Of a DNA stretch of 64,000 nucleotides, positions 1,266-11,012 are shown piece after piece. Position 1 is the first letter of the stretch, and every line of letters starts with the position of its first letter. Both the position numbers and the translations under genes were made by a program. The notes beneath the pieces are model-generated. The model had not been told where the DNA came from and ran no database searches. It worked only from the letters and a program-made list of their open reading frames with translations. Location of the stretch: IMG/VR virus record IMGVR_UViG_3300020380_000001, positions 186,001-250,000 of that record. One strand, 5' to 3'.

Positions 1266-1342
1266 TGGCAGGTGCGGCAGGATTCGAACCTGCGACCCTT
1301 GGCTTAGAAGGCCAATGCTCTATCCAGCTGCGCTACGCACCC
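1266..1342 (-). tRNA. trnR: tRNA-Arg(TCT)
   Basis: Cloverleaf; TTGGC-CTTCTAA-GCCAA anticodon arm; TTCGAAT T-loop; encoded CCA. Confidence 0.95.
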
Positions 1343-1354
1343 ATTAAAGATGGT

Positions 1355-1648
1355 TTAATCAAACGGCCAGTTCGGGTCTCGTTCTGAGAATTCCATCATA
1401 GAGCCATGGAATTCAAGGTTAATTGAACCTACCTTAGCTTCATGGTAAAATATCCCTATCACCGAGTCGTCTTGGTTGTATATCACCTCAACACGGTGCC
1501 CGTCAATTTCTGACTGTTCGATGTCGTCGCTACTAACCTCCATAGTGAGGTCTTCCCAACGACTGTAATTAACTTTTTTGAAGTTTCCGGATTCAGTAAG
1601 TGGCTTACCTTCCATCACGTTCATAAATCCACGCATTGTATCTGACAT
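1355..1648 (-). CDS. protein with shared N-terminal peptide (putative internal head protein)
   Basis: Starts MSDTMRGFMNVMEG; CTAAATAC upstream at about 1674-1681. Confidence 0.8.
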   Translation of the reverse strand: MSDTMRGFMNVMEGKPLTESGNFKKVNYSRWEDLTMEVSSDDIEQSEIDGHRVEVIYNQDDSVIGIFYHEAKVGSINLEFHGSMMEFSERDPNWPFD

Positions 1649-1706
1649 ATTGAGTTATCCTATATAATGTACGTATTTAGTGACAGAGGCTTCTTCACTG
1701 TATAAT

Positions 1707-1868
1707 TCAAAGATTAAAGTAGCGGTTTCTATCTTCAATACTAGGGGTCAGTTTACGCGTGGTTTCGCGAAACTTTTCTTCTTGTTCACGCACACTGCGC
1801 CAAAACTCTAGACCCTCTTCTTTAGTGGGTTCATGTTCAGAAAGTGCTTTCAGTAACTCGTCATCCAT
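1707..1868 (-). CDS. small hypothetical protein (53 aa)
   Basis: Read by hand: MDDELLKALSEHEPTKEEG...; TAATG overlap with the upstream ORF. Confidence 0.55.
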   Translation of the reverse strand: MDDELLKALSEHEPTKEEGLEFWRSVREQEEKFRETTRKLTPSIEDRNRYFNL

Positions 1869-2041
1869 TATTTCGACTCACTCTCGTGTATCTTCTTCCA
1901 CTGTTCAACAGCATCAAAAAACAAGTCACTCACGGCATCAGCGCCGGCATCAGCAATAGATATCATTGTTTCCGAGTCGTTCCACTGCGAAAGCCACTTC
2001 ATGGTTTCATCAAACCATTTAATTTTATCTTCGTCTGTCAT
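1868..2041 (-). CDS. small hypothetical protein
   Basis: Track ORF 1868..2092; the longer start overlaps tRNA-Leu, so MTDEDKIKW at 2041 is preferred. Confidence 0.6.
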   Translation of the reverse strand: MTDEDKIKWFDETMKWLSQWNDSETMISIADAGADAVSDLFFDAVEQWKKIHESESK

Positions 2042-2084
2042 TATGTATACGCCTTTAAAACAGTACACACTTGCAAATTTAATT

Positions 2085-2172
2085 TGGTGCACGGAGTGGG
2101 ACTCGAACCCACACGCCCATTACGGACAGGAGATTTTAAGTCTCCCACGACTACCAATTCCATCACCCGTGC
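2085..2172 (-). tRNA. trnL: tRNA-Leu(TAA)
   Basis: GGAGA-CTTAAAA-TCTCC arm, long variable arm, CCA. Confidence 0.93.
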
Positions 2173-2183
2173 ATGAAAGACAG

Positions 2184-2615
2184 TTAGATAACTGTCTTTG
2201 CGATTGTTGAAGCCGATCTACCGTCGTATAAACCTTCGTGATTAGCTTTAAGGTGCTTCATCACTTGGCCCATATTACAACCTGGGTTGGCTTCTACGAA
2301 TGAAACGATTGTGCCTCTCAGCTCATCTTCATTCATCTGTTTAGGAATGTACCCGTTTACCACATCAAGCTCAAGCTCATAAGCGGCAAGCTCGGATACC
2401 TGATTGCGCTCTTTCATGTTAGTGATAGTTTCATCAATTGACTTGACGAACTTTTTACACATCTGCACTACCTCTGCATCAGTCGATAGACGCTTACCAT
2501 CGTCTAAGCCGATGCGCGAAGCTTCAGAATACAACGTGGTTAAAATACTAACTCTGGCGCTGTCTCGTGCTTTCATAGCTGCCATACGGTCAGCCTTTAT
2601 CTTTTCTATCAACAT
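2184..2615 (-). CDS. GatB/YqeY domain protein
   Basis: MLIEKIKADRMAAMKARD...LLTTLYSE-like N-terminus and MGQVMKHLK...G.YDGRSAS C-terminus are typical of the YqeY family. Confidence 0.85.
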   Translation of the reverse strand: MLIEKIKADRMAAMKARDSARVSILTTLYSEASRIGLDDGKRLSTDAEVVQMCKKFVKSIDETITNMKERNQVSELAAYELELDVVNGYIPKQMNEDELRGTIVSFVEANPGCNMGQVMKHLKANHEGLYDGRSASTIAKTVI

Positions 2616-2632
2616 TTCTATGTTTCCTTCGG

Positions 2633-2863
2633 TTATGTGCCAGCCACCGTGTCGTGGTAAGCGGTGTCGAGTTTCCCGACAACTTTTACTTTCATAATAC
2701 GGTGCGGCGGATAGTGTTCAAAATAATCTTCGCCTTCGGGGTTTTCTGGATTGTGGCGATAGCCAGTTGCAACAATAGCGGAAGAGTGTTCGCGGGCTTT
2801 GCTTTCGTTCGACACGTTGTATTTGAATACTCGGCCGTCGTCGATGTAAACTTGGATTTCCAT
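2633..2863 (-). CDS. hypothetical protein
   Basis: Start at MEIQVYIDDGR, behind a GGAG RBS, within track ORF 2633..2911. Confidence 0.7.
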   Translation of the reverse strand: MEIQVYIDDGRVFKYNVSNESKAREHSSAIVATGYRHNPENPEGEDYFEHYPPHRIMKVKVVGKLDTAYHDTVAGT

Positions 2864-2935
2864 TAGTGTTACTCCGTGTATGTAGAAATGCAGGATCATG
2901 TCGCCAAACACTCACCTGCATTGAGGACAAACTAA

Positions 2936-3268
2936 TTAATAATCGTCGGTAGGATCAAACACAAGATAAGTATAACGGCCGCCATATGCATTCACTGTGT
3001 GAATACGAGCGTATACACCACCCTCGGTGTCTACTCCACGATTACTACCGTATGCTACTTGTACCCGGGATCCGTGCTTGGCTTTCACTTTTTGCAAGTC
3101 ACTGATCAACTCGTCGATGTCATGTGCGCCAGATATTCTGTCGCCTGCATCGTCGTGCGGCACATCTTCGTCGTCATCCGGCATGTCGTAATCTTCGTTT
3201 ACGGCTTTAACTGGCATGCCAGTGTCCGGATCTAGACCTTCTAATATTCTGCGTATGCGCTCTGACAT
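2936..3268 (-). CDS. protein with shared N-terminal peptide variant
   Basis: Starts MSERIRRILEG; acidic; TAAATA upstream at about 3303-3308. Confidence 0.75.
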   Translation of the reverse strand: MSERIRRILEGLDPDTGMPVKAVNEDYDMPDDDEDVPHDDAGDRISGAHDIDELISDLQKVKAKHGSRVQVAYGSNRGVDTEGGVYARIHTVNAYGGRYTYLVFDPTDDY

Positions 3269-3322
3269 ATAAATCTCCTAAATGCTAATCTCAGATATCT
3301 TTATTTAAGCAAGTAGAGAAAA

Positions 3323-3397
3323 TGGTAGAGACACCGTGGGTCGAACACGGAGCACCAGCCTTATGAGGGCCGGGCGAATACCAGCCATTCTGTCTCT
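3323..3397 (-). tRNA. atypical tRNA with CAT anticodon (Met or Ile2)
   Basis: AGAGACA/TGTCTCT acceptor, CTCATAA loop, canonical T arm, CCA; no connector before the D stem; 6-bp anticodon stem. Confidence 0.8.
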
Positions 3398-3403
3398 AGT
3401 ATT

Positions 3404-3493
3404 TGGCGGAGAGTACAGGATTCGAACCTGTGCGCCCCTTTCGGGACTCTCGATTAGCAGTCGAGCGCGATAGACCTACTCTGCCAACTCTCC
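3404..3493 (-). tRNA. trnS: tRNA-Ser(GCT)
   Basis: CTCGA-CTGCTAA-TCGAG arm, long V arm, G73-CCA. Confidence 0.95.
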
Positions 3494-3500
3494 TTTAAAC

Positions 3501-3597
3501 TGGTACCAGGTACGGGATTCGAACCCGCAGGGTCATTATTACAGACCGCGACAAACACTTTAATGATGCCGCGCCTTCCCATTCGGCGCAACCTAGT
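3501..3597 (-). ncRNA. tRNA-like RNA with degenerate anticodon arm (apparent TTA anticodon)
   Basis: 7-bp acceptor, CGCC/GGCG D stem, canonical T arm, A-CCA; weak GGCAT/GTGTT stem around CATTAAA; extra GGTC/GACC arm. Confidence 0.65.
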
Positions 3598-3598
3598 A

Positions 3599-3692
3599 TG
3601 GCGGTGAGGGTGGGATTCGAACCCACGGCCGATGTTGCCACCGACGTTTGATTTCAAGTCAAGTGCAATAAACCAGACTCTGCCACCTCACC
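3599..3692 (-). tRNA. trnS: tRNA-Ser(TGA)
   Basis: TTGA-CTTGAAA-TCAA arm, long V arm, G73-CCA. Confidence 0.95.
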
Positions 3693-3700
3693 ATAAACCT

Positions 3701-3829
3701 TTACAAGCTGTTTATATCAGCTATTGCTTCTTTAAGAGATTCACGCGCACGCTTTTCGCGCTCGAGTTCTTCAACTCTTTTTTCTAGCTTTTTTACAAGC
3801 TTAACAAGATCACCGTGTGTCATTGTCAT
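3701..3829 (-). CDS. small coiled-coil protein (42 aa)
   Basis: Read by hand: MTMTHGDLVKLVKKLEKRVEELERE...; GAGGT RBS. Confidence 0.55.
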   Translation of the reverse strand: MTMTHGDLVKLVKKLEKRVEELEREKRARESLKEAIADINSL

Positions 3830-3848
3830 TGTGAACCTCTATTTAATA

Positions 3849-3886
3849 TGGAGCCGGCCCTGCGATACAACAGGGGATCACCCGGC
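3849..3886 (-). ncRNA. CCA-terminated minihelix (tRNA acceptor mimic or remnant)
   Basis: GCCGG/CCGGC plus CCCTG/CAGGG stems ending T-CCA, spaced like the neighbouring tRNA genes. Confidence 0.45.
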
Positions 3887-3895
3887 ATTGTAAAC

Positions 3896-3970
3896 TGGTA
3901 GGTTAGGTGAGTATCGAACTCACTACAACTGATTTGTAAGAACAGCGCCTCACCTGTCGGCCTCTAACCT
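3896..3970 (-). tRNA. trnV: tRNA-Val(TAC)
   Basis: AGGTTAG/CTAACCT acceptor, CTTACAA loop with one stem mismatch, CCA. Confidence 0.8.
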
Positions 3971-4392
3971 GATGATTTATATTCTCGTAAATACTTGTTT
4001 CTTTTCGAGATCTTTTTATACCTACTACCGGCACCTTTGGCACCCCATGTGTCGGTTTGCGTATGACAATTAGGGCAAAGTAATCTACAATTACTTGGTA
4101 AATTATTGTCACTATCGCCGTCTATGTGATCTAGCTGCAAAGTCAACGGCTTATTGTTCCACATAGTACCGAGGCCGCACTCACTGCATACCGAACCGTA
4201 TTTCTCGACCAAGTATCGTTTAATATTGCCGCCAAGGCCTGCTTCTATTTTGGGAACCTCTTTATTTTCCCAGTCCCATGACAACTTACACTCCAAATCA
4301 CAATACGTGTTGCCTTTTTTATGGGATATATCAGATCCGCAATACCTACAGTGCACTTCTTTCTTTTTTCTGGCACCGGGCCTGTACCTCAC
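3964..4392 (-). CDS. HNH (homing) endonuclease
   Basis: LQLDHIDGDSDNN...CRLLCPNCH motif plus CxxC Zn fingers. Confidence 0.9.
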   Translation of the reverse strand: MRYRPGARKKKEVHCRYCGSDISHKKGNTYCDLECKLSWDWENKEVPKIEAGLGGNIKRYLVEKYGSVCSECGLGTMWNNKPLTLQLDHIDGDSDNNLPSNCRLLCPNCHTQTDTWGAKGAGSRYKKISKRNKYLREYKSSG

Positions 4393-4517
4393 AGATTTGC
4401 CGCACGAGCTTTTATGCCCGATATACTTGTGCCTATTCGTGTAAAACTTCGCCGCAATCGCAAATATATTTTTTCATAAAAATATTTAGCAACTGCCTGA
4501 ATAATCACGTCAAATAA

Positions 4518-4543
4518 GCACTCTGCCTCTGAGCTACGGATCT
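4518..4543 (-). pseudogene. 5' fragment of a tRNA gene (acceptor 5' strand plus D arm)
   Basis: AGATCCG-TA-GCTC-AGAGGCA-GAGT with no anticodon arm, T arm or matching 3' strand nearby. Confidence 0.45.
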
Positions 4544-4550
4544 ATAATTC

Positions 4551-4847
4551 TTAAACTGCTTCGTGTGTAAACTTACACATAACTCGGTAGAATACCTGCG
4601 TTGCAGCATACTTGTCGATATTGTCAAGAAACATTTGGAAGAACTTCTTCTCTGTGTCACTATTGTCCATAGCAACTGCTCTATTCAAAGTAGCTACGTA
4701 TGTTTCCCTAGGAATCAACATAAAGTTTGCGTATTCTACACGACCCCATTCAATTAACTGCTTAAATGTTTCGGGGTCTAACTCTGCTTTAAGCTCGTTG
4801 ACGCGCTCTGTAAGCTCGTCTATGAAGTTATTCTTGTAATCTTCCAT
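4551..4847 (-). CDS. hypothetical protein
   Basis: 98-aa ORF; promoter-like TATAGA/TTGTAA upstream. Confidence 0.65.
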   Translation of the reverse strand: MEDYKNNFIDELTERVNELKAELDPETFKQLIEWGRVEYANFMLIPRETYVATLNRAVAMDNSDTEKKFFQMFLDNIDKYAATQVFYRVMCKFTHEAV

Positions 4848-4966
4848 AATGTTACTCGTTAAGTTTTAATCTATAATAGCACGTCTGTAGAAGCTTACAA
4901 GAATAATTTCTAATTTATTTAAAAATAAAAAAGTGCCAAAGTAATTACTACAATGACACCTTAAAA

Positions 4967-5039
4967 TGGTTGCGGGTACAGGTAACGATCCTGCCGGTCC
5001 TGGGTTATGAGCCCTGGCTGAACACCGTGTTCACCCGCG
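4967..5039 (-). tRNA. atypical initiator-like tRNA-Met(CAT)
   Basis: C1:A72 mismatch and three consecutive G-C pairs closing CTCATAA (fMet hallmarks); ATCGTTA T-loop; no connector. Confidence 0.8.
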
Positions 5040-5053
5040 ATAGATTTAAAAAT

Positions 5054-5132
5054 TGGTTGCAAGGGCGGGATTTGAACCCGCGTCCGCTAGGGTTATGAGC
5101 CCTGCCATCTGCCAGACTGATTGTACCTTACT
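5054..5132 (-). tRNA. initiator-like tRNA-Met(CAT)
   Basis: 1:72 mismatch, GGG-CTCATAA-CCC, canonical T arm, CCA. Confidence 0.85.
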
Positions 5133-5138
5133 ATTGTT

Positions 5139-5216
5139 TGGCACACCCTCCAGGATTCGAACCTGGGACCTTCGCGTTCGTAGCACGACATTCTAATCCA
5201 ACTGAACTAAGGGTGC
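5139..5216 (-). tRNA. trnR: tRNA-Arg(ACG)
   Basis: CGTG-CTACGAA-CGCG arm; CCA. Confidence 0.95.
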
Positions 5217-5225
5217 AATAAACTT

Positions 5226-5720
5226 TTAATCATTTTCGTCAAGAAGGATATCTGTTATAATCTCTTCAAATGCGTGGTAGTCTTCCATACCATCCCAATT
5301 GCCTTCGTTATAAAAAATATCCGTTGTTAGTGATACTATCTCGCGGCGACGGTTACGCGGTAATGCCTTCCATTCATCTATCGAAGTAACGCCTTCTCTG
5401 CGCAAGGTTGACAAAATAGCAACAGAAAAACTGTCGTCATTGTTGCCTGCCTTATTAGTATCACTTAGCACCGAATCTATCATATCAGCAAACATTGCTG
5501 AATCCGGCATCGCTTCATCGTCAATCCAACCATGATTGTAAAACAAGTCACTAGCTAGATCACCGTAGCGATATTTTTCGCGTCTTGATAACGCGTTCCA
5601 GTCAGCTAGCGTGTTGATATTATCACGAGCTAACATTTGTAACACACCCGACTTAACAGCGGCATCGCTGCCGCTAGTGTCTTCCATCAAGTTCATAAAT
5701 TTGCGCATCTGATCTGACAT
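5226..5720 (-). CDS. acidic protein with shared N-terminal peptide; internal duplication
   Basis: Starts MSDQMRKFMNLMED; two copies of an L.R..I.T...W.AL.R..R....L..D.FY..G.W unit. Confidence 0.8.
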   Translation of the reverse strand: MSDQMRKFMNLMEDTSGSDAAVKSGVLQMLARDNINTLADWNALSRREKYRYGDLASDLFYNHGWIDDEAMPDSAMFADMIDSVLSDTNKAGNNDDSFSVAILSTLRREGVTSIDEWKALPRNRRREIVSLTTDIFYNEGNWDGMEDYHAFEEIITDILLDEND

Positions 5721-5729
5721 AAATGTTCC

Positions 5730-6209
5730 TTATTTGATCTGCAATATGCTTGCCGCCTGTCGTAGCGCGACTTCGCGCATCGCTTGCGACTTGTATCTTT
5801 CTTGCATAAAACTCAAAAGTTGATTTATGCCATCTTCAAAATCATCATACGCAGAGTCAGGGTCACCAACACCATAAGCACCGATGATAACACCGTTAGC
5901 AAAGTATTCACCGTCTTCTGCTATTTCAAGAACCTCGGCTTCTTCTTTAGCTTGAGCAGCGTTAATAACCTTAGTAGCAAACTCGTACGGAGCCATAGCG
6001 CCATATGATAAGAGTTGCTTGCCTACTTTTTGCGTATAAGACTCTACTGAACCTTGTTCTATACCGTATATTAACGCTGACGCTTTATCGTAAAACTGAT
6101 CAACTGATATAGCATCAGAGTTTTCCGTAATAGCTGTGTCAATATTTTGATTCAATGGCCCGGACTGACCTTCCATTAAATTCATTATTTTGCGCATCTG
6201 ATCTGACAC
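5730..6209 (-). CDS. protein with shared N-terminal peptide
   Basis: Starts MSDQMRKIMNLMEG; GGAG RBS; GTAAATAAG upstream. Confidence 0.8.
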   Translation of the reverse strand: MSDQMRKIMNLMEGQSGPLNQNIDTAITENSDAISVDQFYDKASALIYGIEQGSVESYTQKVGKQLLSYGAMAPYEFATKVINAAQAKEEAEVLEIAEDGEYFANGVIIGAYGVGDPDSAYDDFEDGINQLLSFMQERYKSQAMREVALRQAASILQIK

Positions 6210-6256
6210 TTAATATCTCCCATAAACTATTGTATAGCTTATTTACGCATTTAAGT

Positions 6257-6333
6257 TGGAAGGGGTGGCAGGATTCGAACCTGCGAGTACCGGGATCAAA
6301 GCCCGGGGCCTTAGACCGCTTGGCGACACCCCT
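6257..6333 (-). tRNA. trnQ: tRNA-Gln(TTG)
   Basis: CCGGG-CTTTGAT-CCCGG arm; CCA. Confidence 0.93.
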
Positions 6334-6339
6334 ACAAAC

Positions 6340-6415
6340 TGGTCTCTCGAGCAGGATTTGAACCTGCGACACGTAGTCCCAAACCACGCATGTTACCAGA
6401 CTACACTATCGAGAG
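6340..6415 (-). tRNA. trnP: tRNA-Pro(TGG)
   Basis: CGTGG-TTTGGGA-CTACG arm; CCA. Confidence 0.93.
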
Positions 6416-6424
6416 AATCAAAAC

Positions 6425-6502
6425 TGGTTGTCCCTGCTGGATTTGAACCAGCGATCAGCGATTATCAGTCGCACGCTTTAGGCCAGGCTAAGCTAAGGGA
6501 CA
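6425..6502 (-). tRNA. trnI: tRNA-Ile(GAT)
   Basis: GCGA-CTGATAA-TCGC arm; CCA. Confidence 0.93.
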
Positions 6503-6510
6503 ATAAACTT

Positions 6511-7353
6511 TTATCGTTTACGTAGAGTAATCTCAACACCTTTAATTGCATTGAGTTCATCTACGATTTGCTGAGGATCTACCTCTATGTCAGTACGACG
6601 TCTAGGCACATACTCGATGTCTCTACCTATTAATTGAATACGTTTAGGCAAAACACGCAATATAAACGGACCACCAACCTGTAGATTTCTATTAGTTAGG
6701 TCATAGTAATAACCGAGCATTTTGAGCGCTTTCGCTACTTCGTCCGATACTACCTGTTTTTTCACCTGTTTTGATGGTTTGTCCGAAACAATATACTCTT
6801 CTGCGGGTGTTTCGTCGTCGTACTCAAGTGCTAGCTCAACCACATTTTTTACGTGTTTCTTTGCAATAAACAAAACACCGTCGTCCATGTCATGCTCTAC
6901 GTCATCTAATTCAAGATCCGAAACAAGCCCAGCGATTTCACTTGCTGTCCATCCAGGCATAGTCAGTTGTACCATTTTACGCTTGGACTCTCTGACTGTC
7001 TTTTTCGGTCCGTTGCCTTGACTAGCATAATACTTGCTGAACTCTTCGTCAGCATATTCGGCCATTTGCTCAATGAAATCCCAGCGAGGGCCATCTTCAG
7101 CATATGCCAAATCCGGAACTATTTTTGTCAGCACTTCGTTTTCAACTGCTGACTCATCATCATCTAGAATTGCACGGGTCAAGTCATGTAAGCGATCTCT
7201 GTCGTCACCAAACAACTCGTTACCAGCGTCATGTGCCATACCATCCAATTTAGACATCAAGCGGCCGAAAACATGTCTTTTTGCTTTCTTGTGTCGCTCG
7301 TCACCAGTTGGTGACTCCATCAAATTCATTAATTCGCGCATTTTTTCTGACAT
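6511..7353 (-). CDS. acidic protein with shared N-terminal peptide
   Basis: Starts MSEKMRELMNLMES; GTAAATAAG upstream; upstream 30 bp resembles that of 5730..6209. Confidence 0.8.
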   Translation of the reverse strand: MSEKMRELMNLMESPTGDERHKKAKRHVFGRLMSKLDGMAHDAGNELFGDDRDRLHDLTRAILDDDESAVENEVLTKIVPDLAYAEDGPRWDFIEQMAEYADEEFSKYYASQGNGPKKTVRESKRKMVQLTMPGWTASEIAGLVSDLELDDVEHDMDDGVLFIAKKHVKNVVELALEYDDETPAEEYIVSDKPSKQVKKQVVSDEVAKALKMLGYYYDLTNRNLQVGGPFILRVLPKRIQLIGRDIEYVPRRRTDIEVDPQQIVDELNAIKGVEITLRKR

Positions 7354-7400
7354 TACTGTCTCCTATAAACTATGTCATATAGCTTATTTACGCAGGTAAT

Positions 7401-7500
7401 TGGTGGACCCCCGCGGACTTGCACCACACGCCTCAATACTACCCTCACTTTATTTCTTTTAAGACACCGGATTTACAGTCCGGGGTGAGGAAAGGGATCC
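7401..7500 (-). ncRNA. rearranged tRNA-Tyr(GTA)-like RNA lacking a D arm
   Basis: GGATCCC/GGGGTCC acceptor plus A-CCA; perfect CCGGA-CTGTAAA-TCCGG arm; CCTCAC/GTGAGG helix replaces the D arm. Confidence 0.7.
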
Positions 7501-7523
7501 TTAATCTGTTACAAAAACTGTTT

Positions 7524-7547
7524 TGGAAGGGGTCGTTACCAACCCCT
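7524..7547 (-). ncRNA. CCA-terminated microhelix
   Basis: AGGGGTT-GGTAAC-GACCCCT-T-CCA; no U-tract on either strand. Confidence 0.35.
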
Positions 7548-7561
7548 CAATAAAACAATTC

Positions 7562-8053
7562 TTAAAAGTGCGGGTTTTTGTCATTGTGAACACCGCGTGC
7601 AAGCGTCCAAATGCCTGCTCGTTTATATGTAGCAGTGTTGCCTTTACGCCAAAATACTGTACCGTCGCTTGTTGTAACTTTCTTCATAGTTTTAGAAATC
7701 TTGACAATTGTACCGCACGGATACCAGTCACCGTTAAAACCGTAACTTACTACGTCACCAATCTTTGGCATGCGCTCTACTGCATGATCATCGTGACGCT
7801 CTACAGCAATATAAGTATCACCGGTTTCTTCACTCAACTGCTCAGCGATTCGTTGCGCAATAAAGCTAGAGCCACAATAATTAAGGGTAACAAACTGGGC
7901 CATTATTTCTTTGTAGAAGTTCGGCGCTTTTTCTTCATCGCCACCTGCCATCTTTAGCGCAGTTTCACGGACTTCTTCAGCCCATGCTTCAGTGTAGTCT
8001 TCGTTACGATCAATAATGTTACCAGTTTTTAAATCTACTCTATAATGTATCAT
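7562..8053 (-). CDS. hypothetical early protein
   Basis: 163-aa ORF behind a repeated promoter cassette. Confidence 0.75.
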   Translation of the reverse strand: MIHYRVDLKTGNIIDRNEDYTEAWAEEVRETALKMAGGDEEKAPNFYKEIMAQFVTLNYCGSSFIAQRIAEQLSEETGDTYIAVERHDDHAVERMPKIGDVVSYGFNGDWYPCGTIVKISKTMKKVTTSDGTVFWRKGNTATYKRAGIWTLARGVHNDKNPHF

Positions 8054-8141
8054 AATTTGCTACCTTGTGTTTGTTTAATCAACCTACACAGACATAATAG
8101 CAGAATGACATTCAAGTACAAGACTTGTTTGAAAATAATTT
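8051..8141 (-). repeat. promoter-leader cassette, copy 1
   Basis: About 90 bp, near-identical to 9506..9600 and similar to 24741..24843 (+). Confidence 0.85.
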
Positions 8142-8153
8142 AAAATATATTTT

Positions 8154-8239
8154 GCACAGCGGACGGGTTTCGAACCCGCAATGCGATATTCGCGCTGCCT
8201 TGAAAGGGCAGTGACTTTACCAGTTTGTCCACCGCTGTG
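8154..8239 (-). tRNA. trnE: tRNA-Glu(TTC) with long variable arm, no encoded CCA
   Basis: CTGCC-CTTTCAA-GGCAG arm; 15-nt V region CGCGAATATCGCATT. Confidence 0.85.
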
Positions 8240-8310
8240 GAAAATATACTTATTCTGGGCAAAAATAAAGCGACTTAATAGCCGCTTTATCATGGCATTA
8301 AGGTTTGTTA

Positions 8311-9021
8311 CTATGCGCGTCTACGAACAGCGATTCCTAGTACTGCTAAAAGCGCAAGTGCTAATGAACCTGGCTCCGGTACCGCTGTTACACCACCTAA
8401 CTGTAAATCATATGAACGCTGCATTAGCCCAGTATCAGGCGATGCAATATTACCGCGCACTTGGATGGCTCCGATGTTTGTGAAGTCAGTGTTACTAAAT
8501 TCACGCGAAAGGAAAAACGCATCACGTCCTGGGCGATTAACACCGGGTATCGGTAACTCAACAGTTTCAGCAGTTCCGTTAGGACCTGACCAAAACGTTA
8601 CGTCAAACCAAGCATTCAAATCTGATTCAATAATCGTTGTAATAAATTTTATCGGGTTGCCAATTGCAGTTAAGTCAAGTCCGCCTAAGCCGAATGGATT
8701 AATTGCATTTGATCCGTCAACGCCGTCCCATTGAATGGTAAACATTGATTCGTTACCTGCGCCTGAACTAAAGAAAAAGTTATCAGCCGCTACGTTTACA
8801 GAGGCGCCTTGGTTGAACTCGTCAACAACGCTTGTTATTTCTAAATCTCGTTCTCCGCCGATCATAGAACCCAATACAGAGCTAAACAAAGTTTGGCCTT
8901 GCATTACTACCATTGGTCCTTGGTCATCAGAAAAGTCATCAATCGTTATCATACCTGCGTTGGCTGAGGTAGTAATACCCATGGCCAATACAGCGCCTAA
9001 CAATAGAGATTTCATTTTCAT
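8311..9021 (-). CDS. PEP-CTERM sorting-domain surface protein
   Basis: Sec signal peptide ending SANA; C-terminal VPEPGS + hydrophobic TM + RRRA. Confidence 0.93.
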   Translation of the reverse strand: MKMKSLLLGAVLAMGITTSANAGMITIDDFSDDQGPMVVMQGQTLFSSVLGSMIGGERDLEITSVVDEFNQGASVNVAADNFFFSSGAGNESMFTIQWDGVDGSNAINPFGLGGLDLTAIGNPIKFITTIIESDLNAWFDVTFWSGPNGTAETVELPIPGVNRPGRDAFFLSREFSNTDFTNIGAIQVRGNIASPDTGLMQRSYDLQLGGVTAVPEPGSLALALLAVLGIAVRRRA

Positions 9022-9068
9022 ATAAATGATCCTTTTAAAGTTATCCAGTTGCTTTTAGCAACACATAC

Positions 9069-9096
9069 ACTATACATTACTTTTTTACAAGGTCAA
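9069..9096 (-). promoter_or_regulatory. sigma70-like promoter for the PEP-CTERM gene
   Basis: TTGACC-16-TATAGT. Confidence 0.65.
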
Positions 9097-9229
9097 GAAG
9101 TTTCTTTAATTCGTAAAACAGTATTTAATAGGCATGTATGAATAACACACGATTTTGACCTCTTATTCACAAAAAGCCAAAATCGTGTGTTATGCGATGA
9201 CCATAATGATCACCGCGCTACACTACTAA

Positions 9230-9508
9230 TTATTTTTGCAAATCGTAATATTCGTACTCATAACGACCACCTTCGATCTCGCCCCACTGCTCCCAGCCGT
9301 TCTTTGAAACATGCATTGTGTTCGCGGCGTGCTCAGGAGTAATGATAAAACGTACATCAAAACCAGCAGCGTGTGCCTCAGCTTTTACACTTTCAAAGTC
9401 TTCAGCGCTGTGTGCAGCACCGTGCCATACGTTTTCAGTTGCGCCTACCATTTCTTCAGCGCTGTTCCAGTTCGCTACTACAAAACTTGTTGCTTTACGA
9501 TTGTTCAT
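9230..9508 (-). CDS. hypothetical early protein
   Basis: 92-aa ORF behind the repeated cassette. Confidence 0.7.
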   Translation of the reverse strand: MNNRKATSFVVANWNSAEEMVGATENVWHGAAHSAEDFESVKAEAHAAGFDVRFIITPEHAANTMHVSKNGWEQWGEIEGGRYEYEYYDLQK

Positions 9509-9600
9509 AATTTGCTACCTTGTGTTTGTTTAATCAACCTACACAGATATAATAGCAAAATGACATCCAAACACAAGGCCTTTTTGAAAATAATTTCAAA
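9506..9600 (-). repeat. promoter-leader cassette, copy 2
   Basis: See 8051..8141. Confidence 0.85.
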
Positions 9601-9685
9601 AATATTTCGTTGCTCTGGGTACTTATATTAGTCGCTTTTAAACTCATGTGTTTATCATCTCGCAAAATGGCAAACATATAAGTTT

Positions 9686-9770
9686 TGGTGGGTTGGGTGG
9701 GATTCGAACCCACGAAGCATTACGCGCTAGATTAAAAGTCTAGTATCTTTAACCACTCGATCACCAACCC
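9686..9770 (-). tRNA. trnK: tRNA-Lys(TTT) on a class II (Tyr-like) body
   Basis: CTAGA-CTTTTAA-TCTAG arm; 13-nt V region CGCGTAATGCTTC; A73-CCA. Confidence 0.88.
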
Positions 9771-9803
9771 ATATCGTTTTCGTACTTTCGTCTTTCGTTT
9801 CAT
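9732..9803 (-). CDS. Lys/Arg-rich 23-aa leader ORF running into tRNA-Lys
   Basis: AGGAGA RBS + MKRKTKVRKRYGLVIEWLKILDF; the stop is the TAA in the anticodon loop. Confidence 0.4.
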   Translation of the reverse strand: MKRKTKVRKRYGLVIEWLKILDF

Positions 9804-9838
9804 TTTCTTTCTCCTGTTAATTATACGAGTGTAGTATG

Positions 9839-9912
9839 CAGGGACGACGGGACTTGAACCCGCGCTCTCCGCAGTGACAGTGCGATATTTTAACCAACTA
9901 AACTACGCCCCT
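9839..9912 (-). tRNA. trnD: tRNA-Asp(GTC), no encoded CCA, flanked by a 13-bp inverted repeat
   Basis: CGCA-CTGTCAC-TGCG arm; flanks 9827..9839 and 9913..9925 are perfectly complementary. Confidence 0.88.
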
Positions 9913-9936
9913 GCATACTACACTCATATCTTTATT

Positions 9937-10488
9937 TTAATATAACGAGTCTTCTACGATTTCAAACAAGTCATTATACATAGCTGAAGCCATTGCATTA
10001 AACTCGTCGTAAGCGCCATCAGCAAAAAAATCACTATACAACATATGTGCATCGCCTTTATTGTCACGTACTGACTTTGACACGTACTGTAACGAGCGAG
10101 GCTTAAAGTGCGACATCTTTTGCAATCTAGGTTCCGGCGGGAAAGCACGCATTTCAATATCAATTGAGTCATCGCCTTCCTGATAAAACACTAACATTTT
10201 AAGAACTGTATTCGCGTTCCAGTTAGTTTTTATCGGCTTAAACTTGATAGTGAAGCCTTCTTTACCAGCTTGAGGAACATCGTCGCCTTGTAGTACGTCG
10301 ACACCCATATCAGCAATCTCATCTAACCAAGTGTTCATACCACTAACGATTTGTTCACGGAACTTGCTGTATTGTTCTCTGAATCCGGCAGCGTCGCTTT
10401 CCATTAATCTGAAAACCTTTTCCATACCGGAATTTTGTCCTGTTTTTTTCCCTTCAAGGATTTTGTTAACTCGATTTCGGTCAGCCAT
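9937..10488 (-). CDS. protein with variant shared N-terminal peptide
   Basis: MADRNRVNKILEG...MEKVFRLMES; ATAAATAG upstream. Confidence 0.75.
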   Translation of the reverse strand: MADRNRVNKILEGKKTGQNSGMEKVFRLMESDAAGFREQYSKFREQIVSGMNTWLDEIADMGVDVLQGDDVPQAGKEGFTIKFKPIKTNWNANTVLKMLVFYQEGDDSIDIEMRAFPPEPRLQKMSHFKPRSLQYVSKSVRDNKGDAHMLYSDFFADGAYDEFNAMASAMYNDLFEIVEDSLY

Positions 10489-10566
10489 GTTTAGTATTCT
10501 CCTGTTATCCGTTATCGTTACTATTTATCCAATAACTTAAGAGCGTACAAAACCAATAACCAAAAT

Positions 10567-10658
10567 TGGCGGACGGTGCTGGATTTGAACCAGCGCGGGG
10601 GATATTCTCCACCTCCGGGTTAACAGCCCGGCGCAATCGGCCACTATGCGAACCGCCC
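10567..10658 (-). tRNA. trnN: tRNA-Asn(GTT) on a class II (Ser-like) body
   Basis: CCGGG-CTGTTAA-CCCGG arm; 20-nt V region; G73-CCA; G3:U70 pair. Confidence 0.88.
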
Positions 10659-10674
10659 ATAAACTTTTAAAGTT

Positions 10675-10750
10675 TGGTGGAGTATACCAGACTCGAACTG
10701 GTCAGGCTATCATCTTGCAAGGATGATCCGGGTGCCCATGCCCATACCCC
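10675..10750 (-). tRNA. trnA: tRNA-Ala(TGC), atypical D region
   Basis: G3:U70; ATCATC-CTTGCAA-GATGAT 6-bp arm; CCA. Confidence 0.88.
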
Positions 10751-10758
10751 ATTAAACT

Positions 10759-10833
10759 TGGTGCCGAGTGGTGGTACCGCCCCACCCTCTAAGGATTTTC
10801 AATCCATCGCTAATCTGTCTCAGCTAACTCGGC
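10759..10833 (-). tRNA. trnF: tRNA-Phe(GAA), non-canonical T and D loops
   Basis: GCCGAGT/ACTCGGC acceptor; TTGAAAA loop; T-loop GGCGGTA. Confidence 0.85.
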
Positions 10834-10838
10834 TAAAT

Positions 10839-10912
10839 TGGTGCCGGCGGAGAGAATCGAACTCCCGTAGACGCATTACAAGTGCGCTGCATGGCCACTG
10901 TGCTACGCCGGC
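10839..10912 (-). tRNA. trnT: tRNA-Thr(TGT)
   Basis: CGCA-CTTGTAA-TGCG arm; CCA. Confidence 0.93.
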
Positions 10913-10935
10913 TGAATATCTGTCTAAATACATTC

Positions 10936-11012
10936 TGGGGTAATAGACGGGCAACGATCCCGCATCTTCCAGGGTCACATCCTGGGGCTCTGCCATTTGA
11001 GCTACTATCACC
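10936..11012 (-). tRNA. trnH: tRNA-His(GTG)
   Basis: G-1:C73; CCAGG-ATGTGAC-CCTGG arm; T-loop ATCGTTG; CCA paired with the leader (CATTCTGG/CCAGAATG). Confidence 0.9.

What the first reader, a model, noticed from the sequence alone, without database searches (positions are those of the whole stretch)
7401..7500. D-armless, re-wired tRNA-Tyr-like RNA
Seen: a 7-bp acceptor with A73-CCA and a perfect Tyr anticodon arm (CCGGA-CTGTAAA-TCCGG), but no D arm. The linker CCTCAC pairs with GTGAGG downstream, enclosing the anticodon arm and an AT-rich insert. About 14 nt of spacer follows, then a T arm with loop TGCAAGT. It is the only Tyr-anticodon element in the array. Intact terminal helices argue for selection rather than decay. 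Inference: a novel tRNA fold, a TyrRS or nuclease decoy, or a precursor that is processed further.
Basis: partly seen in the sequence, partly recalled or inferred. Interest (0 to 1): 0.62.

Follow-up and report, generated by a model that had tools for sequence, protein, structure and literature searches.

The report
Rewired phage tyrosine tRNA, hidden family
The 100-base element is a real, conserved tyrosine-type tRNA gene of a marine jumbo phage, in which the usual D hairpin is replaced by a helix between a 5' strand and the loop of the variable arm. It belongs to a large family in phage and planctomycete tRNA arrays that standard tRNA finders miss and that I could not find described.

Summary
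The element has an acceptor stem with A73-CCA, a GUA anticodon arm, no D hairpin, CCUCAC pairing with GUGAGG, and a T arm. ARAGORN and Rfam's tRNA model both miss it.

It is not decay. A 98%-identical sister phage differs inside the element only by a compensatory U-A to C-G change in the CCUCAC/GUGAGG helix. I collected 207 distinct relatives:
- more than 100 uncultivated phage contigs;
- long tRNA arrays of Planctomycetota chromosomes;
- three cultured phages, where the gene is unannotated.

All relatives share one design:
- an 8-bp acceptor stem and a 4-bp T stem;
- a 2-nt connector;
- a 6-bp "D helix" formed with the variable-arm loop, which is a pseudoknot and covaries strongly;
- a short, covarying variable stem;
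- invariant A73 and a GUA anticodon.

In phage arrays the element usually fills the otherwise empty Tyr slot. In this phage it is the only Tyr candidate.

Best reading: a working tRNA-Tyr charged by the host TyrRS. Its remodelled D/variable region may escape nucleases that cut the tRNA-Tyr variable arm. That last part is inference.

The window copy is an outlier, with an odd T loop and no YGG motif.

The parts
7401..7500 (-). Whole gene. It is a 100-nt non-canonical tRNA-Tyr(GUA) with an encoded CCA. RNA nt 1 is window 7500 and nt 100 is window 7401.
   Evidence: Sequence. Model R1 scores it 70.5 bits. The independent model R2 scores it 60.3 bits, E about 1.9e-15. The SCYZ1 homologue has E = 8e-13.
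7493..7500 (-). Acceptor stem 5' strand, nt 1-8 (GGAUCCCU). Nt 8 is the eighth pair in the 8/4 reading.
   Evidence: It pairs with nt 89-96. In the family the 8th pair (nt 8 with 'nt 65') is paired in 83/84 rows of A3 and 127/127 rows of A2, with GC, UG, UA, AU and CG all seen.
7491..7492 (-). Two-nucleotide connector UU, nt 9-10.
   Evidence: The connector is UU in 135 of 207 members and YU or AU in most of the others.
7485..7490 (-). D-region strand CCUCAC, nt 11-16. This is the 5' strand of the long-range 'D helix'.
   Evidence: It pairs 6/6 with nt 53-58. The sister phage has U13 to C together with A56 to G. Family covariation at 4 of the 6 pairs.
7466..7484 (-). Anticodon arm, nt 17-35. 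It has a C17.U35 mismatch, the 5-bp stem CCGGA/UCCGG and the loop CUGUAAA. The anticodon GUA lies at window 7474-7476.
   Evidence: Sequence. All five stem pairs covary in the family. The extra 26-44-like pair is G.U in 168 members, with UA, AU, GC and CG also seen. The window is one of 3 members with C.U.
7460..7465 (-). Variable-arm stem, 5' strand GUCUUA, nt 36-41.
   Evidence: It pairs with nt 66-71. The variable stem covaries in the family; for example the second pair shows CG, UA, GC and AU.
7449..7459 (-). A-rich spacer of the variable loop, nt 42-52.
   Evidence: The spacer is 11 nt here and 4-11 nt in the family, usually 7-8 nt.
7443..7448 (-). Variable-loop strand GUGAGG, nt 53-58. 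This is the 3' strand of the long-range 'D helix' and forms the pseudoknot with nt 11-16.
   Evidence: Same evidence as for 7485-7490.
7436..7442 (-). 3' part of the variable loop, nt 59-65 (GUAGUAU). It sits where 191 of 207 relatives carry YGG.
   Evidence: The window and its sister phage are the outliers.
7430..7435 (-). Variable-arm stem, 3' strand UGAGGC, nt 66-71.
7413..7429 (-). Connector GU (nt 72-73) and the T arm. The stem is GUGG/CCGC (nt 74-77 with nt 85-88) and the loop is UGCAAGU (nt 78-84).
   Evidence: Sequence. The T loop is UUCRAYU in 205 of 207 members. The G at loop position 2 is unique to this lineage.
7401..7412 (-). Acceptor 3' strand (nt 89-96), discriminator A73 (window 7404) and the encoded CCA (window 7401-7403).
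   Evidence: A73 is present in 207/207 members and G1-C72 in 202/207.

Best explanation
The element is a functional tRNA-Tyr(GUA) gene of a marine jumbo phage. It belongs to a previously unrecognised structural class of tRNA.

Shown by sequence and covariation:
- The RNA has an 8-bp acceptor stem, a 4-bp T stem and a 2-nt connector.
- A normal anticodon arm follows directly on a 6-nt strand. That strand pairs not with a D-hairpin partner but with six nucleotides in the enlarged loop of a short variable arm.
- The 'D stem' is therefore assembled in trans, as a pseudoknot.

Inferred:
- This helix stacks on the anticodon stem as a normal D stem does.
- The YGG that follows it in most members stands in for G18-G19 at the elbow, so the molecule keeps an L shape.
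- The host RNase P and 3' processing enzymes mature it.
- The host TyrRS charges it. The phage encodes no TyrRS, and the bacterial Tyr identity set is intact: A73, G1-C72, G34-U35-A36 and a long variable arm.
- It then decodes UAY codons as the Tyr member of the phage's complete tRNA set.

Further inference, probability about 0.35-0.4: the class exists because its remodelled D/variable region is not recognised or cut by nucleases that disable host tRNA-Tyr through the variable arm, such as Septu or retron-Eco7 PtuAB. That would keep phage translation running under attack.
For: Structure:
- Every helix covaries in 84 CM-aligned phage members. The long-range helix is 96.4% paired, and 4 of its 6 pairs change on both sides. 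The model that made the alignment contains no pairs for this helix.
- 39 different strand pairs are seen among 207 members.
- The 8th acceptor pair covaries, whereas the alternative 49-65 pair is mostly unpaired.
- In this lineage the only two differences from the 98%-identical sister phage are U13 to C and A56 to G.
- The independent model R2 gives the window element 60.3 bits.

Function as tRNA-Tyr:
- A73 is invariant, G1-C72 occurs in 202/207 members, and all members carry the CUGUAAA loop (the search patterns required that loop).
- The phage genome has detectable tRNAs for 18 amino acids and an odd tRNA-Trp candidate, so this element is the only Tyr candidate.
- In 99 viral loci with a family member, 56 carry at least 10 other tRNAs. 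ARAGORN finds a Tyr in only 11 of the 99, against 38-57 loci for every other amino acid.
- The phage has no TyrRS/TrpRS gene.
- SCYZ1 has a 12/12 sigma-70 promoter with an extended -10, 20 nt upstream of its copy, and a normal tRNA-Pro right behind it.

Counter-defence idea:
- Three roughly 45-kb cultured phages carry this gene as their only tRNA, or as one of two.
- Published work shows that PtuAB of Septu and retron-Eco7 cut the tRNA-Tyr variable arm. It also shows that T5/SP15 tRNA-Tyr escapes through its own altered variable loop (PMC13096335, PMC12673091, PMC11555353).
- Planctomycete genomes keep a canonical tRNA-Tyr and carry the rewired one only in accessory long arrays.
Against: - There is no direct evidence of transcription, processing, charging or decoding. 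Metatranscriptome assemblies only show that contigs of roughly 95%-identical relatives cover the locus.
- The window copy is the family outlier. It lacks the YGG motif, has G instead of U at T-loop position 2, is 97 nt long against 84-91 nt, and has a C.U mismatch at the 26-44-like pair. Its elbow may differ, or it may work less well.
- Eleven phage loci and all planctomycete genomes examined also hold another tRNA-Tyr, so the rewired form is not always the sole Tyr decoder.
- No D-hairpin-less tRNA is known to work with bacterial EF-Tu and ribosomes.
- The L-shape model is reasoning, not a computed structure.
- The nuclease-escape idea rests on analogy only.
Confidence: 0.65

Rival explanations
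1. Decoy or sponge. The RNA mimics tRNA-Tyr (acceptor end, anticodon loop, variable stem) to bind and occupy a tRNA-Tyr-directed nuclease or another tRNA-binding defence protein. It may or may not be charged, but it is not used for decoding.
For: - Solitary carriage by roughly 45-kb phages and a strong promoter in SCYZ1 fit a dose-dependent inhibitor.
- Overexpressed tRNA-Tyr partly protects host tRNA-Tyr from Septu (PMC13096335).
- The unusual core might be incompatible with the ribosome.
- Some irregular tRNAs are charged but not used in translation (PMC5389517).
Against: - The element occupies the Tyr gap of near-complete tRNA sets.
- The strict conservation of U33, GUA, A37, A73, G1-C72, a 12-bp acceptor/T branch and a canonical T loop is what a decoding tRNA needs. 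It is more than a nuclease decoy would need.
Confidence: 0.2
2. A tRNA-like RNA with a non-translational role, like the stable tRNA-like RNAs of unknown function in the T4 and T5 tRNA regions. It could act as a regulator, a primer or an amino-acid donor.
For: The T5 record annotates several 'tRNA-like stable RNAs with unknown functions' inside its tRNA cluster. This shows that phage tRNA arrays can hold such RNAs.
Against: - The models do not match any T5 stable RNA better than ordinary tRNAs do (at most 16 bits).
- The invariant Tyr anticodon loop and TyrRS identity set point to tyrosine decoding.
Confidence: 0.08
3. A precursor that is processed further. The variable-loop insert would be removed, like an intron, to give a shorter RNA.
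For: The insert is AT-rich and longer in the window than elsewhere.
Against: - The insert carries the covarying strand of the D helix and the conserved YGG.
- No intron family matched.
- Removing it would leave a tRNA without any D helix.
- The design is constant in 207 members.
Confidence: 0.04
4. A decaying tRNA-Tyr pseudogene, or a chance resemblance.
For: Standard finders reject it. The fold z-score is unremarkable. The window copy has an aberrant T loop.
Against: - A compensatory double change against the sister phage.
- Covariation in all helices.
- The independent model gives E about 2e-15.
- Homologues occur in unrelated phages and in bacterial arrays.
Confidence: 0.02

Closest known systems
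Bacterial class II tRNA-Tyr (canonical, long variable arm)
   Same: - GUA anticodon in a 7-nt loop with U33 and A37.
- A73 and G1-C72.
- A variable arm that starts right after the anticodon stem.
- A T arm, and an encoded or added CCA.
- A position among other tRNA genes.
   Different: - There is no D hairpin. The 5' half of the D arm (stem strand plus a GG-bearing segment) sits in the variable loop instead.
- The acceptor/T branch is 8/4, not 7/5.
- The connector has 2 nt but leads to the far end of the D helix.
- The anticodon stem has 6 bp.
- It is not found by RF00005 or ARAGORN.
allo-tRNAs and (8/4) tRNA-Ser/His of bacteria and phages; bacterial tRNA-Sec (Mukai et al., PMC5389517)
   Same: - A 12-bp acceptor/T branch split 8/4.
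- A long variable arm.
- A long (6-bp) D helix and an extended anticodon stem.
- Occurrence in phage tRNA clusters, overlooked by standard annotation.
   Different: - Those RNAs keep a D stem-loop hairpin (long stem plus tetraloop). Here the D helix is formed in trans with the variable loop.
- The discriminator is A73, not G73 or U73.
- The identity is Tyr, not Ser, Sec or His.
- That paper does not mention a tyrosine form.
D-arm-lacking mitochondrial tRNAs (e.g. mt tRNA-Ser(AGY), nematode mt tRNAs; reviewed in PMC7609411)
   Same: There is no D hairpin between the acceptor and anticodon stems, yet the mitochondrial ones are working tRNAs.
   Different: - Those are shrunken RNAs (about 55-65 nt) with a flexible replacement loop, and they use organelle-specific partners.
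- This family is large (84-97 nt).
- It rebuilds a D helix by long-range pairing.
- It lives in phages and bacteria.
Phage T5/SP15 tRNA-Tyr that escapes retron-Eco7/Septu PtuAB (PMC11555353, PMC12673091, PMC13096335)
   Same: Both are phage-encoded tRNA-Tyr with an altered, longer variable loop. Both are driven by strong promoters. Both may share the same role as a nuclease-resistant replacement.
   Different: T5 tRNA-Tyr is a canonical cloverleaf found by normal annotation. It scores only 25-29 bits with the family models, against 48-98 bits for members. Resistance of the rewired family has not been tested.
Stable tRNA-like RNAs of unknown function in T4/T5 tRNA clusters
   Same: Both lie in a phage tRNA array, have tRNA-like ends, and are not called as tRNA.
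   Different: They have no sequence or structure match to the family models. They have no conserved amino-acid identity set, whereas this family has a complete Tyr set.

Membership tests
Canonical tRNA (Rfam RF00005 / ARAGORN cloverleaf) | Acceptor stem closed by a discriminator and a CCA end | tested here: met
   Seven or eight pairs, A73 and an encoded CCA.
Canonical tRNA (Rfam RF00005 / ARAGORN cloverleaf) | Anticodon arm: a 5-bp stem and a 7-nt loop with U33 and a purine at 37 | tested here: met
   CCGGA / CUGUAAA / UCCGG.
Canonical tRNA (Rfam RF00005 / ARAGORN cloverleaf) | D stem-loop hairpin between positions 10 and 25 | tested here: not met
   Only 10 nt lie between the acceptor and the anticodon stem. 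The partner strand lies 37 nt downstream in the variable loop.
Canonical tRNA (Rfam RF00005 / ARAGORN cloverleaf) | Score above the model's threshold | tested here: not met
   RF00005 gives no hit at E <= 1. ARAGORN finds nothing even when relaxed. ARAGORN and 0/100 relatives. The Rembedalsseter member scores 26.3 bits, below the cut-off of 29.
Bacterial tRNA-Tyr identity (TyrRS recognition set, from established knowledge) | A73, G1-C72, anticodon G34-U35-A36 and a long variable arm | tested here: met
   All are present in the window. A73 occurs in 207/207 members and G1-C72 in 202/207.
Bacterial tRNA-Tyr identity (TyrRS recognition set, from established knowledge) | Tyrosylation by TyrRS and decoding of UAY codons | not testable with these tools
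   This needs charging and suppression assays. The phage has no TyrRS of its own.
Rewired 8/4 tRNA-Tyr family defined here (models R1, R2) | Match to a covariance model built without the query | tested here: met
   R2 gives 60.3 bits, E about 1.9e-15. Ordinary tRNAs score at most 29 bits.
Rewired 8/4 tRNA-Tyr family defined here (models R1, R2) | A 6-bp helix between the D-region strand and the variable loop, crossing a variable stem | tested here: met
   6/6 pairs, a 6-bp variable stem, and a compensatory change against the sister phage.
Rewired 8/4 tRNA-Tyr family defined here (models R1, R2) | Eighth acceptor pair (nt 8 with 'nt 65') and a 4-bp T stem | tested here: inconclusive
   The window has U8.G89, but U73.G89 (the 7/5 reading) is equally possible in this copy. 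The family covariation favours 8/4.
Rewired 8/4 tRNA-Tyr family defined here (models R1, R2) | YGG directly after the loop strand, and T loop UUCRAYU | tested here: not met
   The window has GUA and UGCAAGU. It is 1 of 16 members without YGG and 1 of 2 with a deviant T loop.
allo-tRNA / (8/4) tRNAs (PMC5389517) | An 8/4 or 9/3 branch, a long variable arm and a long-stem D hairpin with a tetraloop; mostly G73 or U73 | tested here: not met
   The 8/4 branch and the long variable arm are shared. The D hairpin is absent and the discriminator is A73.
D-armless mitochondrial tRNAs | A reduced size with a D-replacement loop, in an organellar genome | tested here: not met
   The element is 97 nt plus CCA, it rebuilds a D helix by long-range pairing, and it lies in a phage genome.

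The most novel reading that the evidence does not exclude
A whole class of tRNA has gone unseen: 8/4 tRNA-Tyr molecules whose D arm is assembled in trans from a 5' strand and the variable loop. This amounts to a topological permutation of the tRNA core.

On this reading they are charged and decode on bacterial ribosomes. They are the standard Tyr member of phage and mobile 'backup' tRNA sets. They evolved as a counter-measure to defence nucleases that recognise or cut the D/variable region of host tRNA-Tyr.
Probability: 0.35. Interest if true: 0.92.

Novelty: new variant of a known kind. Interest (0 to 1): 0.85.

Why it matters
1. It would be the first tRNA outside organelles that lacks the D hairpin. 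It would also be the first in which the D helix is built by pairing with the variable loop. That shows the tRNA core tolerates a change of strand connectivity.

2. It explains a systematic hole in annotation. Tyr is reported as one of the rarest isotypes in tRNA arrays (PMC4758250), and ARAGORN misses almost every member found here. Phage tRNA repertoires and codon-usage analyses are therefore biased.

3. It links to the current question of why phages carry tRNAs. tRNA-Tyr is a known target of Septu and retron-Eco7, whose cut lies in the very arm that is remodelled here. Three cultured phage-host pairs (two Pseudomonas, one Rhizobium) carry the gene almost alone, so the idea can be tested directly.

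4. A TyrRS substrate with an orthogonal-looking core could be of use for genetic-code engineering.

Tried and rejected
- ARAGORN with intron, low-threshold and mitochondrial modes gave only implausible partial folds.
- Rfam found no family for the element.
- megablast of the neighbourhood against GenBank phages found nothing. The exact-pattern scan with the window's own anticodon stem also found nothing.
- blastn with other family members against cultured phages was mostly blank.
- The first idea, that this is the housekeeping tRNA-Tyr of planctomycetes, was rejected. Each of five genomes also has a canonical tRNA-Tyr, the rewired copy sits in long accessory arrays, and only 7 of 151 sampled Planctomycetota genomes have a strong hit.
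- The 7/5 reading of the acceptor/T branch was rejected for the family, because the 49-65 pair is paired in only 26/84 and 24/127 rows (versus 98, 99).
- The alternative partner UGAGG (nt 66-70) for CCUCA was rejected, because the sister phage's compensating change is at nt 56.
- No sigma-70 promoter or intrinsic terminator was found next to the window copy.
- T5 tRNA-Tyr and the T5 stable RNAs are not members.
- The phage encodes no TyrRS.
- Nine literature searches and seven papers read gave no description of this fold. The library holds only open-access papers, so a prior report elsewhere cannot be ruled out.
- Metatranscriptome contigs gave presence only.

Full report
**Context**

The window is bases 186001-250000 of a complete 306.5-kb virus record with direct terminal repeats. 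Tail, head-decoration and protease families confirm that it is a phage. Public runs that hold it are marine metagenomes. Window 1266-11011 carries a minus-strand tRNA array: 17 genes by ARAGORN and three more by Rfam. The finding lies in a 208-nt gap between two minus-strand ORFs, 7562-8053 and 6511-7353.

**The observation**

Read on the minus strand from 7500 to 7401, the RNA has these parts:
- GGAUCCC pairs with nt 90-96, followed by A73 and CCA.
- Ten nucleotides later comes a perfect anticodon arm with loop CUGUAAA (anticodon GUA).
- CCUCAC (nt 11-16) is complementary to GUGAGG (nt 53-58).
- A T arm has the loop UGCAAGU.

ARAGORN, also in relaxed, intron and mitochondrial modes, and RF00005 at E <= 1 do not call it. 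Its energy is ordinary for the composition, with z = -0.82. Thermodynamics alone therefore decides nothing.

**Relatives**

The search for relatives widened in steps:
1. A sensitive blastn found one cultured phage, Pseudomonas phage SCYZ1, with a 77%-identical unannotated copy (E = 8e-13). It lies directly before a normal tRNA-Pro and upstream of the small terminase gene.
2. Pattern scans that kept the anticodon loop and the two hexamers found more copies in IMG/VR contigs.
3. The same kind of scan found 72 loci in species-representative genomes, nearly all Planctomycetota, and 95 metagenome loci.
4. In planctomycetes the element sits inside long tRNA arrays. Examples are 39 tRNA genes in 8 kb and 28 in about 4 kb. 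ARAGORN finds no Tyr in these arrays.
5. Each of five planctomycete genomes also has a canonical class II tRNA-Tyr elsewhere. Only 7 of 151 sampled Planctomycetota genomes have a strong hit. In bacteria this is therefore an accessory, array-borne gene. It matches the mobile 'L-arrays' of the literature (PMC8421152, PMC4758250).
6. A looser viral scan left the 5' strand entirely free.
7. Two more cultured phages carry unannotated copies: Pseudomonas phage Rembedalsseter (81 bits) and Rhizobium phage RHph_N3_2 (60 bits, beside an HNH endonuclease gene). These copies are the only tRNA-like genes of those genomes. SCYZ1 has this gene plus tRNA-Pro.

**Structure from covariation**

I used two alignments. 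A2 has 127 members with the window's hexamers. A3 has 84 distinct phage members aligned by a covariance model that contains no pairs for the long-range helix.

- All classical helices covary.
- In A3 the long-range helix is 96.4% paired, and four of its six pairs change on both sides. The fourth pair, for example, is UA 34, CG 15, AU 12, GU 10 and GC 7.
- Thirty-nine different strand combinations occur among 207 distinct members.
- A second stem of 3-6 bp joins the nucleotides just after the anticodon arm to those just before the T arm, and it also covaries. This is the variable-arm stem. It crosses the long-range helix, so the fold is a pseudoknot.
- The nucleotide after the seventh acceptor pair covaries with the last nucleotide of the supposed 5-bp T stem: 83/84 and 127/127 paired, with GC, UG, UA, AU and CG all seen. 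The conventional 49-65 pair is mostly unpaired (versus 57, 67). The family therefore has an 8/4 acceptor/T branch.
- A 26-44-like pair is mostly G.U with some Watson-Crick replacements. It lengthens the anticodon stem to 6 bp.
- Other constant features: A73 (207/207), G1-C72 (202), connector UU, the first two C-G pairs of the long-range helix, a YGG right after the loop strand (191/207, and not imposed by the pattern that gave A2), and a canonical T loop (205/207).

**The window copy**

A model built only from independent phage members scores the window copy at 60.3 bits, against at most 23 bits for the window's ordinary tRNAs and 29 bits for T5 tRNA-Tyr.

A 310-kb sister phage carries the element at 98% identity. 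The only two differences in 100 nt are U13 to C and A56 to G. This converts a U-A pair of the long-range helix into C-G. It also shows that GUGAGG at nt 53-58, and not the nearby UGAGG, is the partner.

The window copy is nevertheless the outlier of the family:
- It is the longest, at 97 nt before the CCA.
- It has a 6-bp variable stem.
- It has no YGG.
- It has G at T-loop position 2.
- It has a C.U mismatch at the 26-44-like position.

**What it most likely is**

Read against a normal tRNA, the strand before the anticodon stem takes the place of positions 20-25. The loop strand takes the place of positions 10-15, and the following YGG takes the place of G18-G19. The 5' half of the D arm has in effect moved into the variable loop. 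A 6-bp D helix, a 6-bp anticodon stem and an 8/4 branch recall tRNA-Sec and allo-tRNAs (PMC5389517). Those RNAs keep a D hairpin. The three-dimensional reading is inference.

The evidence that it serves as tRNA-Tyr:
- The full bacterial TyrRS identity set is present.
- The phage has no TyrRS gene.
- The phage has tRNAs for 18 other amino acids, and I found an odd tRNA-Trp candidate just outside the window. This element is then the only Tyr candidate in the genome.
- Among 99 viral loci with a member, 56 hold at least 10 other tRNAs. ARAGORN sees a Tyr in only 11 of the 99, against 38-57 loci for every other amino acid.
- SCYZ1 drives its copy from a perfect sigma-70 promoter.

**Why such a tRNA?**

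Published work shows that Septu and retron-Eco7 PtuAB stop phages by cutting host tRNA-Tyr in the variable arm. It also shows that T5-like phages escape with a tRNA-Tyr whose variable loop differs. Here a family has its variable arm locked into a pseudoknot with the D region. Small phages carry it as their sole tRNA, and it sits in accessory 'backup' arrays. This fits the same logic, but it is untested. I put it at about 0.35-0.4.

**Rivals**

- A decoy that is not used for decoding is possible (0.2).
- Another non-translational role is less likely (0.08).
- Further processing of the insert is unlikely (0.04).
- Decay or chance is effectively excluded (0.02).

**Expression**

Four marine metatranscriptome assemblies hold contigs of roughly 95%-identical relatives. 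One contig spans the element. In another run the contigs stop at 7412 and restart at 7495, near the element's ends. Contigs cannot show transcription, ends or abundance, so this is presence only.

**Novelty**

I found no description of this fold in nine full-text searches. The papers most likely to mention it are also silent: the review of non-canonical tRNAs, the allo-tRNA paper, the tRNAscan-SE 2.0 paper, the tRNA-array surveys and a catalogue of phage structured RNAs. The library is limited to open-access papers. I rate the finding as a new structural variant of a known kind (tRNA), with high interest.

Noticed in passing
window 8154-8238, 9686-9770, 10567-10658 (minus strand): tRNA-Glu(UUC), tRNA-Lys(UUU) and tRNA-Asn(GUU) are 85, 85 and 92 nt long with long variable regions. 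These isotypes normally have short variable loops. Planctomycete arrays likewise hold 87-93-nt Arg and Gly tRNAs (L089:7007-7395).
   Followed up: no
window 3501-3597 (minus strand): ARAGORN calls a 97-nt tRNA with anticodon UUA, which would read the UAA stop codon, between two tRNA-Ser genes. Its anticodon stem has several G.U pairs. It could be an ochre suppressor or a mis-call. I did not examine stop-codon use in the phage.
   Followed up: no
window 3899-3970, 5057-5132, 10762-10833 (minus strand): Three tRNAs are seen by Rfam but not by ARAGORN. By eye their anticodons are UAC (Val), CAU (Met or Ile2) and GAA (Phe).
   Followed up: partly
outside the window: G000:C1:185357-185436, minus strand (about 570-640 bases before window position 1): An 80-nt candidate tRNA-Trp(CCA) with a 7-bp acceptor stem, a normal T arm, an encoded CCA, an odd D region and a long variable region. 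ARAGORN misses it. It would complete the phage's set of 20 amino acids.
   Followed up: partly
window 8311-9021 (minus strand): A 236-aa ORF inside the tRNA array has an N-terminal signal peptide. Its C-terminus resembles a PEP-CTERM sorting signal: a VPEP motif, a hydrophobic stretch and then RRRA.
   Followed up: no
L013:8209-8303: The 180-kb phage contig that carries a rewired tRNA-Tyr also has a second, 95-nt tRNA-Tyr(GUA) with what looks like a 5-bp D stem. ARAGORN calls it, but Rfam at gathering threshold does not.
   Followed up: no
L012:8476-8707 and L012:6743-6810: A group I intron (73 bits) and an int-alpA RNA match lie near the rewired tRNA-Tyr of this 17-kb viral contig. The T arm of that copy is degenerate (loop AGCGUUA).
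   Followed up: no
window 7287-7322: In metatranscriptome contigs of related phages (runs X17 and X18), 289 other letters replace 34 bases here, near the 5' end of the ORF 6511-7353. This is an insertion/replacement variant between relatives.
   Followed up: no
L289:1430-1513 and L304:3166-3249: Two family members have C1-G72, the archaeal/eukaryotic type of first pair for tRNA-Tyr, instead of G1-C72. They also have no encoded CCA.
   Followed up: no
L395:798-1388 (Rhizobium phage RHph_N3_2): An HNH endonuclease gene lies about 100 bases upstream of the solitary rewired tRNA-Tyr. This recalls the homing endonucleases that move tRNA regions in T4- and T5-like phages.
   Followed up: no
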